A DNA stretch of 30,743 nt from Octopus sinensis (lineage: Eukaryota). Positions within the stretch are counted from its first letter, which is position 1. The number at the start of each line of letters is the position of its first letter. Shown one piece after another: positions 16,166-16,273 of the stretch. The position numbers and the translations under genes are program-made. The notes beneath the pieces are model-generated. The model searched no databases. It was not told the DNA's origin and saw only the letters and a program-made list of their open reading frames with translations. The stretch is from positions 1 through 30,743 of the forward strand of contig NW_021832524.1 of assembly GCF_006345805.1 (NCBI RefSeq), in the 5' to 3' direction.

Positions 16166-16273
16166 TCCATTACGGCCGATCTTACCAATCGGTTTCGCAC
16201 AAAGGGTTCAACGGAGTGTTATGTAAAAGCCCGATTATGCAACCCTGCGCTCTTCAGAGGTGGCCGATATGGA
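16166..16273 (-). ncRNA. Type I hammerhead ribozyme motif with canonical core
   Basis: Minus strand: CUGAAGA (16257-16251); stem II GCGCA+GGGUU pairing with AACCC+UGUGC; GAAA (16196-16193); stem III ACC/GGU closing a GAUU loop; cleavage triplet GUA (16185-16183); stem I of 13 Watson-Crick pairs with internal mismatches. Folded by eye. Confidence 0.8.

What the first reader, a model, noticed from the sequence alone, without database searches (positions are those of the whole stretch)
16166..16273. Apparently intact hammerhead ribozyme in the sense strand of a TRPC intron
Seen (minus strand): UCCAUAUCGGCCACCU-CUGAAGA-GCGCAGGGUU-[32 nt]-AACCCUUUGUGC-GAA-ACC-GAUU-GGU-A-cleavage-AGAUCGGCCGUAAUGGA. 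All invariant core nucleotides are present: CUGANGA, the G10.1-C11.1 pair, GAAA, the A15.1-U16.1 pair and a GUA triplet. Stem I has 13 Watson-Crick pairs plus a mismatch, a bulge and a 2x2 internal loop. Predicted cleavage is between 16183 and 16182. It lies in the intron between the pore-helix exon and the putative cassette exon, in the transcribed orientation. Established: type I hammerheads occur in animal retroelements, and some are retained in introns. Inference: co-transcriptional self-cleavage could compete with splicing and so affect channel output, exon choice or premature termination. The A-C mismatch near the core and the large stem II loop may slow it, and an alternative hairpin (16131-16170) could sequester distal stem I.
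Basis: partly seen in the sequence, partly recalled or inferred. Interest (0 to 1): 0.85.

Follow-up and report, generated by a model that had tools for sequence, protein, structure and literature searches.

The report
Lone hammerhead-like motif in octopus intron
An intron of an octopus TRPC ion-channel gene holds one complete but oddly built copy of the hammerhead self-cleaving RNA motif, a kind of element already common in animal genomes, and nothing found here shows that it regulates the gene.

Summary
It has CUGAAGA, G10.1-C11.1, GAAAC, a 3-bp helix III with a GAUU loop, GUA and a 13-pair helix I; predicted cleavage is at 16183|16182. The window is the whole Octopus sinensis contig VCDQ01004117.1. 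The motif lies in sense orientation in a 2,239-nt GT-AG intron of a partial TRPC7-like gene.

It is far better than chance for one window, by a rough estimate of 1e-5 or less. It is not a canonical family member:
- No Rfam hammerhead model matches it, even at E<=10 on a 141-nt slice.
- A model built from four experimentally cleaving animal hammerheads misses it.
- Helix II spans 54 nt, against the usual 4 bp plus a short loop.
- It is not in a tandem repeat and has no Penelope-like ORF beside it.

The hammerhead fold lies 5 kcal/mol above the minimum free energy, but four proven hammerheads do no better (2.9-7.4).

Copy number and conservation in other octopuses could not be tested, because the databases hold no octopus genomic ORFs (shown by a control). 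One non-cephalopod-looking relative lacks the motif.

Best reading: a genuine, atypical, solitary type I hammerhead motif, probably a relic of a mobile element. Its activity is untested and a regulatory role is unsupported.

The parts
16258..16273 (-). Helix I, 5' strand (UCCAUAUCGGCCACCU)
   Evidence: Pairs with 16182-16166; duplex energy -16.5 kcal/mol.
16251..16257 (-). Core box CUGAAGA (C3-A9)
   Evidence: C3 at 16257.
16197..16250 (-). Helix II, 54 nt. GCGCAGGGUU pairs with AACCCUUUGUGC (G10.1-C11.1; either 8 contiguous pairs including G.U, or 5 bp + UU bulge + 5 bp). It closes a 32-nt partly paired loop (16240-16209).
   Evidence: hairpin energy -12.5 kcal/mol. Far longer than the canonical 4 bp plus loop (PMC4209133).
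16194..16196 (-). Core G12 A13 A14
16184..16193 (-). Helix III: A15.1-U16.1, C-G, C-G, closed by the tetraloop GAUU
   Evidence: The loop is not palindromic, so this is a monomer-type helix III.
16182..16183 (-). A17 (16183) and the predicted scissile bond between 16183 and 16182
   Evidence: Follows from the core numbering. Cleavage itself was not tested.
16166..16182 (-). Helix I, 3' strand (AGAUCGGCCGUAAUGGA)
16273..16324 (-). Hairpin A: 23-bp stem (one G.U) with a 6-nt loop, directly abutting the 5' end of helix I
   Evidence: (I1: 23-nt arms, 96% complementary). With the hammerhead it makes a 236-nt region whose fold has z = -6.1 against shuffles.
16130..16171 (-). Hairpin B: 14-nt arms, 86% complementary. 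It overlaps the last 6 nt of the helix I 3' strand and is a possible competitor.
   Evidence: I5. It is not chosen in the minimum-free-energy fold of the extended region, which keeps helix I.
15003..17241 (-). Host intron (GTGAGT...TTTCAG) of the TRPC7-like gene. It lies between the pore-helix exon (17332-17242) and a 27-aa mini exon (15002-14927).
16095..16690 (.). Unique-sequence block of about 600 bp that holds the module. It is bracketed by a (TA)n array (16686-16907) and a (CA)n/(TA)n array (15959-16090).
   Evidence: There is no second copy in the window.

Best explanation
This is a genuine but non-canonical, solitary type I hammerhead motif in Octopus sinensis. It most probably descends from one of the hammerhead-bearing mobile elements common in invertebrate genomes, and it now sits as a single copy in a microsatellite-rich intron of a TRPC7-like gene.

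If transcribed with the pre-mRNA, it can adopt the three-helix fold and would cut between A16183 and A16182. That would leave a 2',3'-cyclic phosphate on the upstream piece and a 5'-OH on the downstream piece.

It lacks the usual short helix II/loop 2 that docks on helix I, so I expect slow, minimal-hammerhead-like kinetics at cellular Mg2+. I expect little or no effect on splicing of the 2.2-kb intron.

Shown: the motif, its coordinates, its improbability by chance, its context and its failure to match canonical models. Inferred: mobile-element ancestry, slow activity and the absence of a regulatory role.
For: - The complete core and three helices are at the stated positions.
- It is the only descriptor hit in the window, and its helices are much better than those in shuffles.
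- It has features my descriptor did not require but natural hammerheads typically show: G10.1-C11.1, and C15.2-G16.2 giving GAAAC and GUA. This is the CUGANGA/GAAAY/RUH criterion used in the supplement of PMC7229834.
- Helix III of A-U plus two pairs with a tetraloop matches the 'invertebrate' style described in PMC7229834.
- The hammerhead-compatible fold is 5.0 kcal/mol above the minimum free energy, with ensemble probability 1e-3. Four experimentally cleaving hammerheads treated identically give 2.9-7.4 kcal/mol and 4e-6 to 2e-3.
- Cephalopod genomes carry type I hammerheads and Penelope elements: 235 Rfam Hammerhead_1 loci in the giant squid (PMC6962438).
- Most metazoan hammerheads belong to retroelements, and many occur as single truncated copies (PMC4209133).
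- Penelope-like elements prefer (TA)n targets (PMC8557442), and the block is flanked by (TA)n arrays.
Against: - No Rfam hammerhead model matches, even at E<=10 on 141 nt.
- My model R1, built from four real type I hammerheads, does not recover it with filters off.
- Helix II is 54 nt, and no recognisable loop 1/loop 2 contact exists.
- A C.A mismatch and a bulge lie close to the core in helix I.
- Nothing ties the block to a mobile element. There is no tandem repeat, no second copy in the window, no tRNA-like head, and no reverse-transcriptase or endonuclease ORF beside it.
- (TA)n arrays are everywhere in this window, so the flanks prove little.
- Genome-wide, a chance look-alike of this quality is not excluded by the random-sequence estimate alone.
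Confidence: 0.6

Rival explanations
1. A domesticated, gene-regulatory intronic ribozyme. Co-transcriptional self-cleavage competes with splicing of the TRPC7-like pre-mRNA and so tunes channel output, use of the 27-aa mini exon, or premature termination. This would parallel the amniote intronic hammerheads and the CPEB3 intronic ribozyme.
For: - The motif is in sense orientation in a canonical GT-AG intron, 1,058 nt from the 5' splice site and 1,179 nt before the next annotated exon.
- The core is complete.
- The adjoining 23-bp hairpin is nearly perfect, and the 236-nt module is unusually structured, with z = -6.1.
- Precedents exist: conserved intronic hammerheads in amniotes (PMC6155905), and a CPEB3 ribozyme whose half-life matches polymerase transit to the next exon (PMC10919898 abstract).
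Against: - No conservation data could be obtained.
- The one related locus recovered (L001) has no CUGANGA...GAAA motif and no Rfam hit in the 2.9 kb after its pore-helix exon. It resembles scallop more than octopus, so this only argues against deep conservation.
- No match to the Rfam intronic models HH9 and HH10.
- The lack of a canonical tertiary contact predicts slow cleavage.
- From my own knowledge, not tested here: published work on ribozymes placed in introns found that only fast cleavers disturb splicing, because exons stay tethered to RNA polymerase II.
Confidence: 0.07
2. A chance look-alike. Inverted repeats in a repeat-rich intron happen to frame CUGANGA, GAAA and UH in the right register, there is no hammerhead ancestry, and there is probably no activity.
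For: - The loose descriptor alone is expected 0.73 times per shuffled window.
- All covariance-model tests are negative.
- The architecture is atypical.
- The window is full of self-complementary microsatellites, and 0.125% of random genomic 16-mer pairs reach the helix I energy.
- By my rough product of marginals, a 2.7-Gb genome could hold up to about one such site by chance before the extra consensus features are counted.
Against: - For this window the joint expectation is about 1e-5 or less (inference).
- G10.1-C11.1 and C15.2-G16.2 were not required by the descriptor, and each is only about 8% of possible pairs by composition, yet both match the natural consensus.
- Helices I and II are built from ordinary mixed sequence, not microsatellite.
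- Real hammerhead-derived motifs are frequent in cephalopod genomes, so the prior favours descent.
Confidence: 0.12
3. Part of a larger structured non-coding unit in which the hammerhead core is incidental. Candidates are a hairpin-derived small-RNA precursor built on hairpin A, or a fold-back DNA-transposon remnant.
For: - A 23-bp near-perfect hairpin abuts the motif.
- There are weak, generic microRNA-hairpin matches at 16265-16334, far below gathering scores.
- The region is strongly structured.
Against: - All those Rfam matches are 14-27 bits against gathering scores of 70-91.
- The hairpin has a 6-nt loop and no extended lower stem. From my own knowledge, that is a poor fit to animal primary microRNAs.
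- No terminal inverted repeats or target-site duplication were seen around the block.
- This reading does not explain the complete hammerhead core.
Confidence: 0.05

Closest known systems
Canonical metazoan type I hammerheads of retrozymes and satellite-like repeats (coral, mussel, axolotl, Schistosoma; PMC7229834, PMC4209133)
   Same: - Type I topology.
- Identical core boxes: CUGANGA, GAAAC, GUH.
- G10.1-C11.1.
- A short helix III with a tetraloop, as in invertebrate examples.
   Different: - Helix II is 54 nt rather than 4 bp plus a 5-7-nt loop.
- Helix I is a long, interrupted 13-pair stem rather than 6 bp plus loop 1.
- A1.1-U2.1 instead of the U1.1-A2.1 seen in all four control sequences.
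- The helix III loop is not palindromic.
- It is not in a 170-400-bp tandem repeat.
- It is missed by Rfam and by model R1.
Minimal hammerheads of Penelope-like elements (PMC4209133)
   Same: - A long helix II (7-8 bp in those elements; 8 contiguous pairs here).
- Frequent occurrence as single, truncated copies.
- Association of the elements with (TA)n targets (PMC8557442).
   Different: - The minimal hammerheads of Penelope-like elements lack helix III or have a tiny palindromic one. They also carry an unpaired nucleotide between A9 and G10.1.
- This motif has a 3-bp helix III with a tetraloop and no such nucleotide.
- No RT/GIY-YIG ORF or pseudo-LTR is recognisable nearby.
Conserved intronic hammerheads of amniotes (Rfam HH9 and HH10; RECK, CTCL and DTNB introns; PMC6155905)
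   Same: A type I hammerhead in the sense strand of an intron of a protein-coding gene, thought to derive from retroelement hammerheads.
   Different: - The amniote hammerheads are defined by deep orthologous conservation and canonical tertiary loops.
- Conservation is untested here.
- The Rfam models do not match.
- The helix II architecture differs.
CPEB3 HDV-like intronic ribozyme (PMC10919898)
   Same: A self-cleaving RNA in an intron whose cleavage rate, relative to transcription and splicing, could set mRNA yield.
   Different: It belongs to a different ribozyme class and is conserved across mammals, with experimental support. None of that is available for this motif.

Membership tests
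Hammerhead ribozyme, type I (descriptor definition) | Conserved core: C3 U4 G5 A6 N7 G8 A9, G12 A13 A14, the A15.1-U16.1 pair, and H17 other than G | tested here: met
   CUGAAGA at 16257-16251, GAA at 16196-16194, A16193-U16184, A17 at 16183.
Hammerhead ribozyme, type I (descriptor definition) | Three helices around the core, with helix I open and helices II and III closed by loops | tested here: met
   Helix I has 13 Watson-Crick pairs, helix II has 8 contiguous pairs or 5+5 pairs, and helix III has 3 bp plus GAUU.
Hammerhead ribozyme, type I (descriptor definition) | Extended consensus used by the de la Pena laboratory: CUGANGA / GAAAY / RUH, with G10.1-C11.1 | tested here: met
   GAAAC, GUA and G16250-C16197. 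The criterion is quoted in the supplement of PMC7229834.
Hammerhead ribozyme (Rfam clan: Hammerhead_1, Hammerhead_3, Hammerhead_II, HH9, HH10) | A score against the family covariance model at or near the gathering threshold | tested here: not met
   No hammerhead match at gathering on the whole window. None at E<=10 on 651 nt or on 141 nt.
Hammerhead ribozyme (any type) | Tertiary contact between helix I and helix II loops, or a pseudoknot, which gives fast cleavage at physiological Mg2+ (PMC3088659) | tested here: inconclusive
   No canonical loop 1/loop 2 is present. A UU bulge in helix II and a bulge or mismatch in helix I lie about 5 bp from the core and might substitute, but this cannot be judged from sequence.
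Hammerhead ribozyme (any type) | Site-specific self-cleavage yielding 2',3'-cyclic phosphate and 5'-OH ends | not testable with these tools
   This needs in vitro transcription or end mapping.
Metazoan retrozyme (non-LTR, circular-RNA-forming) | Hammerhead within head-to-tail tandem repeats of about 170-400 bp | tested here: not met
   No tandem array over the region. The 427-nt-spaced 15-mer is not significant, with 43 of 300 shuffles scoring as well. No second copy in the window.
Metazoan retrozyme (non-LTR, circular-RNA-forming) | Canonical helix sizes: helix I 6 bp, helix II 4 bp, helix III 1-2 bp with a palindromic loop | tested here: not met
   Helix II is 54 nt and loop 3 (GAUU) is not palindromic. 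Model R1, built from four such ribozymes, does not find it.
Penelope-like element minimal hammerhead | Little or no helix III, an unpaired nucleotide between A9 and G10.1, and a location in a pseudo-LTR next to an RT/GIY-YIG ORF | tested here: not met
   Helix III is 3 bp plus a tetraloop, and G10.1 follows A9 directly. No such ORF is in the flanks and none of the five ORFs scanned against Pfam gave a match. A truncated copy cannot be excluded.
Domesticated intronic hammerhead (amniote HH9/HH10 type) | Conservation at the orthologous intron across species | not testable with these tools
   No octopus or other cephalopod genomic sequence is reachable. The protein database lacks octopus six-frame ORFs, as shown by the SINE-ORF control. 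The only relative (L001), which looks non-cephalopod, lacks the motif.

The most novel reading that the evidence does not exclude
The hairpin-plus-hammerhead module (16324-16166) is a lineage-specific, selectively maintained cis-acting ribozyme of the octopus TRPC7-like gene. It would have an unusual long helix II that substitutes for the canonical loop-loop contact. Its co-transcriptional cleavage would set how much full-length channel mRNA is made, or which isoform with or without the 27-aa mini exon. If so, this would be an invertebrate counterpart of the amniote intronic hammerheads.
Probability: 0.05. Interest if true: 0.7.

Novelty: new member of a known kind. Interest (0 to 1): 0.3.

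Why it matters
Hammerhead motifs number in the thousands in many animal genomes, and intronic ones are known, so one more solitary copy is not surprising. It would matter in two cases.

First, it might prove conserved at this TRPC intron across octopods. That would be an invertebrate case of a domesticated intronic ribozyme in a neuronal ion-channel gene.

Second, its 54-nt helix II might support fast cleavage without the canonical loop-loop contact. That would be a structural variant that current covariance models miss.

The practical lesson is that Rfam models do not detect descriptor-complete hammerheads that carry large helix II insertions.

Tried and rejected
1. Rfam at gathering and at E<=10 found no hammerhead. 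The only hits were generic microRNA-like matches to TA/CA microsatellites and to hairpin A, far below threshold.
2. I first took 'the hammerhead fold is not the minimum-free-energy fold' as evidence against activity. I rejected that after four experimentally cleaving hammerheads scored the same or worse under identical constraints.
3. A possible ancestral tandem repeat, suggested by a 15-mer repeated 427 nt upstream, is not significant.
4. I searched for other copies by translating the + strand ORF that spans the motif and searching the protein database. Nothing was found. A control with a SINE-like multi-copy ORF from the same window also found nothing, so the database lacks octopus six-frame ORFs and the negative says nothing about copy number.
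5. A pattern scan of JGI metagenome contigs for core plus helix II/III sequence found no match.
6. Orthologue hunt: only the window's own contig carries P0001. P0010 is not on record. L001/L002 (P0005) look non-cephalopod and lack the motif.
7. Model R1, built from four real hammerheads, is too narrow. It misses the candidate and gives one weak partial hit at 805-769 that lacks CUG.
8. I tried CpG observed/expected as an age or constraint indicator. It does not discriminate: 0.87 for the window and 1.19 for the motif.
9. A tRNA-like SINE head was not found, and Pfam gave nothing on five ORFs from across the window, including the + strand ORF that spans the motif.
10. A Helitron-type 3' hairpin/CTRR end and RNA polymerase III A/B boxes were considered by eye and do not fit.

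Full report
**What is there.** Read on the minus strand, 16273-16166 is 5'-UCCAUAUCGGCCACCU-CUGAAGA-GCGCAGGGUU-[32 nt]-AACCCUUUGUGC-GAA-ACC-GAUU-GGU-A|AGAUCGGCCGUAAUGGA-3'. In hammerhead numbering:
- C3-A9 are at 16257-16251.
- G10.1 (16250) pairs with C11.1 (16197).
- G12-A14 are at 16196-16194.
- A15.1 (16193) pairs with U16.1 (16184).
- A17 is at 16183, and the scissile bond lies between 16183 and 16182.

Helix I has 13 Watson-Crick pairs, interrupted by a 2x2 loop, a bulged C and a C.A mismatch. Helix II is either 8 contiguous pairs (three of them G.U) or 5 bp + UU bulge + 5 bp, and it closes a 32-nt loop. Helix III is 3 bp with a GAUU loop.

**Is it more than chance?** A loose type I descriptor that I wrote requires CUGANGA, helix II of at least 3 bp, GAAA, helix III of at least 3 bp, and UH. 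It finds this site and no other on either strand. On its own that proves little. Dinucleotide-preserving shuffles of this AT-rich window give 0.73 such hits per window, 0.13 with helix II of at least 5 bp, and 0.03 with helix I also at 5 of 8 pairs or better.

The real helices are far better. Helix II has 8 contiguous pairs. The helix I duplex is -16.5 kcal/mol, reached by none of 20,000 random pairs of window composition and by 0.125% of random genomic 16-mer pairs, the latter mostly microsatellite pairing with microsatellite. Multiplying these marginals gives about 1e-5 or less per window. This is a rough inference, not a simulation of the joint event.

Two features that the descriptor did not demand also match the natural consensus: G10.1-C11.1, and C15.2-G16.2, which give GAAAC and GUA. 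By window composition, each is only about 8% of possible pairs. Over a 2.7-Gb genome a chance look-alike is not excluded by random-sequence arithmetic alone. However, the giant squid genome has 235 Rfam Hammerhead_1 loci (PMC6962438), so cephalopods do carry real hammerheads and descent is the more likely origin.

**Tests against known families.** No hammerhead family of Rfam 15 matches at gathering threshold on the whole window. None matches at E<=10 on 651 nt or on 141 nt, where a 12-bit match to an unrelated family was still listed.

I then took four experimentally cleaving metazoan type I hammerheads (coral, mussel and two axolotl) from Supplementary Table 2 of PMC7229834. I aligned them and built model R1. 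R1 does not recover the candidate even with filters off.

The likely reasons are the 54-nt helix II where the model expects 14 nt, A1.1-U2.1 where all four controls have U1.1-A2.1, and the interrupted helix I. The motif therefore meets the descriptor definition of a hammerhead but fails the covariance-model definitions. I do not file it under any Rfam family.

**Folding.** The hammerhead-compatible fold is 5.0 kcal/mol above the minimum free energy, and its ensemble probability is about 1e-3, whatever flank length is used. The competitor is a 5-bp hairpin, CUCUG/CAGGG, which sequesters C3-G5.

I first read this as evidence against activity. The same calculation on the four proven ribozymes gives 2.9-7.4 kcal/mol and probabilities of 4e-6 to 2e-3. 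The nearest-neighbour model simply penalises the open three-way core, so the argument does not discriminate.

**Context.** The window is the whole contig VCDQ01004117.1 of the Octopus sinensis assembly GCA_006345805.1. It carries one annotated gene, a partial 'short transient receptor potential channel 7-like' of 248 aa. Its exons lie on the minus strand.

The motif is in a canonical intron (GTGAGT at 17241, TTTCAG ending at 15003; 2,239 nt). This intron lies between the pore-helix exon and a 27-aa mini exon that is absent from the scallop and flatworm homologues. The cleavage site is 1,058 nt from the 5' splice site and 1,179 nt from the 3' splice site.

A 23-bp, nearly perfect hairpin (16324-16273) sits directly 5' of helix I. 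Together with the hammerhead it makes a 236-nt stretch whose fold has z = -6.1 against shuffles. The module lies in a block of about 600 bp of unique sequence (16095-16690). The block is bracketed by (TA)n and (CA)n/(TA)n arrays.

**No sign of a mobile element.**
- There is no tandem repeat over the region, and the 427-nt-spaced 15-mer is not significant.
- There is no second copy of the block in the window.
- There is no tRNA-like head.
- There is no recognisable retroelement ORF next to it.

**Relatives.** I could not reach any other cephalopod genomic sequence.
- The + strand ORF that happens to span the motif has no relative in the protein database. A control query from a SINE-like repeat present several times in this same window also found nothing. 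The database therefore holds no octopus six-frame ORFs, and the negative says nothing about copy number.
- A pattern scan of JGI metagenome contigs found nothing.
- The only related genomic locus recovered is L001, a Logan contig. Its exon sequences resemble scallop more than octopus. It has tiny introns, a pore-helix exon at 1117-1206 and 2.9 kb of following sequence with no CUGANGA...GAAA arrangement and no Rfam hit. That argues only against conservation across molluscan classes.

**How it most likely works.** If the intron is transcribed and the three-helix fold forms, the 2'-OH of A16183 attacks the adjacent phosphate. This is the established hammerhead mechanism. The products are an upstream RNA ending in a 2',3'-cyclic phosphate and a downstream RNA with a 5'-OH.

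The tertiary contact between loop 2 and helix I raises activity by orders of magnitude at low Mg2+ (PMC3088659). The candidate has no recognisable version of it, so I infer slow, minimal-type kinetics in the cell.

From my own knowledge, not tested here: ribozymes placed in introns disturb splicing only when they cleave fast. A slow cleaver in a 2.2-kb intron should therefore have little effect. The regulatory scenario is possible but unsupported.

As for origin, most metazoan hammerheads belong to retrozymes or Penelope-like elements, and many survive as single truncated copies (PMC4209133). Penelope-like elements prefer (TA)n targets (PMC8557442). This makes a mobile-element relic the most economical origin, but no element boundary or partner ORF was found. 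(TA)n arrays are so common in this window that the flanks are weak evidence.

**Verdict.** This is a descriptor-complete, architecturally atypical, solitary type I hammerhead motif in the sense strand of an octopus TRPC intron. It is a new member of a known kind. Its activity, copy number and conservation are all still open. I rate interest at 0.3. The reading that would raise it is a conserved, functional intronic ribozyme in an octopus ion-channel gene, to which I give about 5%.

Noticed in passing
window 16273-16324: A 23-bp, nearly perfect hairpin (one G.U, 6-nt loop AAAAUA) directly abuts the 5' end of helix I. It draws only weak generic microRNA-hairpin matches in Rfam, 14-27 bits against gathering scores of 70-91. 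Its origin and role are unknown.
   Followed up: partly
window 14927-15002 and 3104-3142 (minus strand): Two mini exons of the annotated TRPC7-like model (27 aa and about 9-12 aa) insert about 35 residues between the pore helix and S6. These residues are absent from the scallop and flatworm homologues. The 27-aa exon has good splice signals. The exons could be lineage-specific cassette exons or gene-model artefacts.
   Followed up: partly
window 769-805 (minus strand): Weak partial match (10.8 bits, E=0.43) of my canonical hammerhead model: AUGAG...GGCCGAAACAGCUGUA. It is preceded by AAA rather than CUG, so the core is incomplete. It lies inside a SINE-like repeat and is probably a chance resemblance.
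   Followed up: yes
window about 764-1233, 4963-5379 and 24412-24645 (minus strand), among others: Several copies of a SINE-like repeat whose translations share motifs such as RRHLPKMPRSGTEPGTMW and LRPCWS. The sequence AATAAGTACTAGGCTTACAAAGAATAAGTCC near 1145 matches, from memory, an abundant octopus SINE. No tRNA-like head was detected by ARAGORN.
   Followed up: partly
window 21982-22233 and 22285-22629 (both strands): Two adjacent diverged copies of a segment whose + strand ORF (22292-22600) reads ...KMVPIMIGALGTARKDIDKWLKEIEI...LLGIARVIRRVL. From memory, this resembles the C-terminal tail of invertebrate non-LTR retrotransposon proteins. Pfam gave no hit.
   Followed up: partly
window 17350-18200 and 20300-21260: Long, imperfect trinucleotide-repeat tracts (ATC/GTC/CAC/CAA types) lie in the introns flanking the pore-helix exon. 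They create very long spurious acidic, His-rich or Thr-rich ORFs on both strands, including a 270-aa ORF that runs through the pore-helix exon.
   Followed up: no
window 3233-3504 and 3603-3764: Minisatellites with 13-nt (about 21 copies) and 13-15-nt units (AGCATGTAATTTA; AAATTTGTGCATG). They share the core TGCATG/CATGTAA.
   Followed up: no
window 16101-16106 (minus strand): A run of six U lies about 60 nt downstream of the hammerhead. It would be an RNA polymerase III terminator if the block were a polymerase III-transcribed SINE like the Schistosoma hammerhead element. No convincing A/B boxes were seen upstream.
   Followed up: partly
L001 (Logan SRR12548991 contig, 4,138 nt): This contig holds a TRPC orthologue or paralogue from an unidentified animal. 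Its exon sequences are closer to scallop than to octopus. Its introns are only 140-300 nt between the S4-S5, S5 and pore-helix exons, against 1.4-2.6 kb in the octopus contig.
   Followed up: partly
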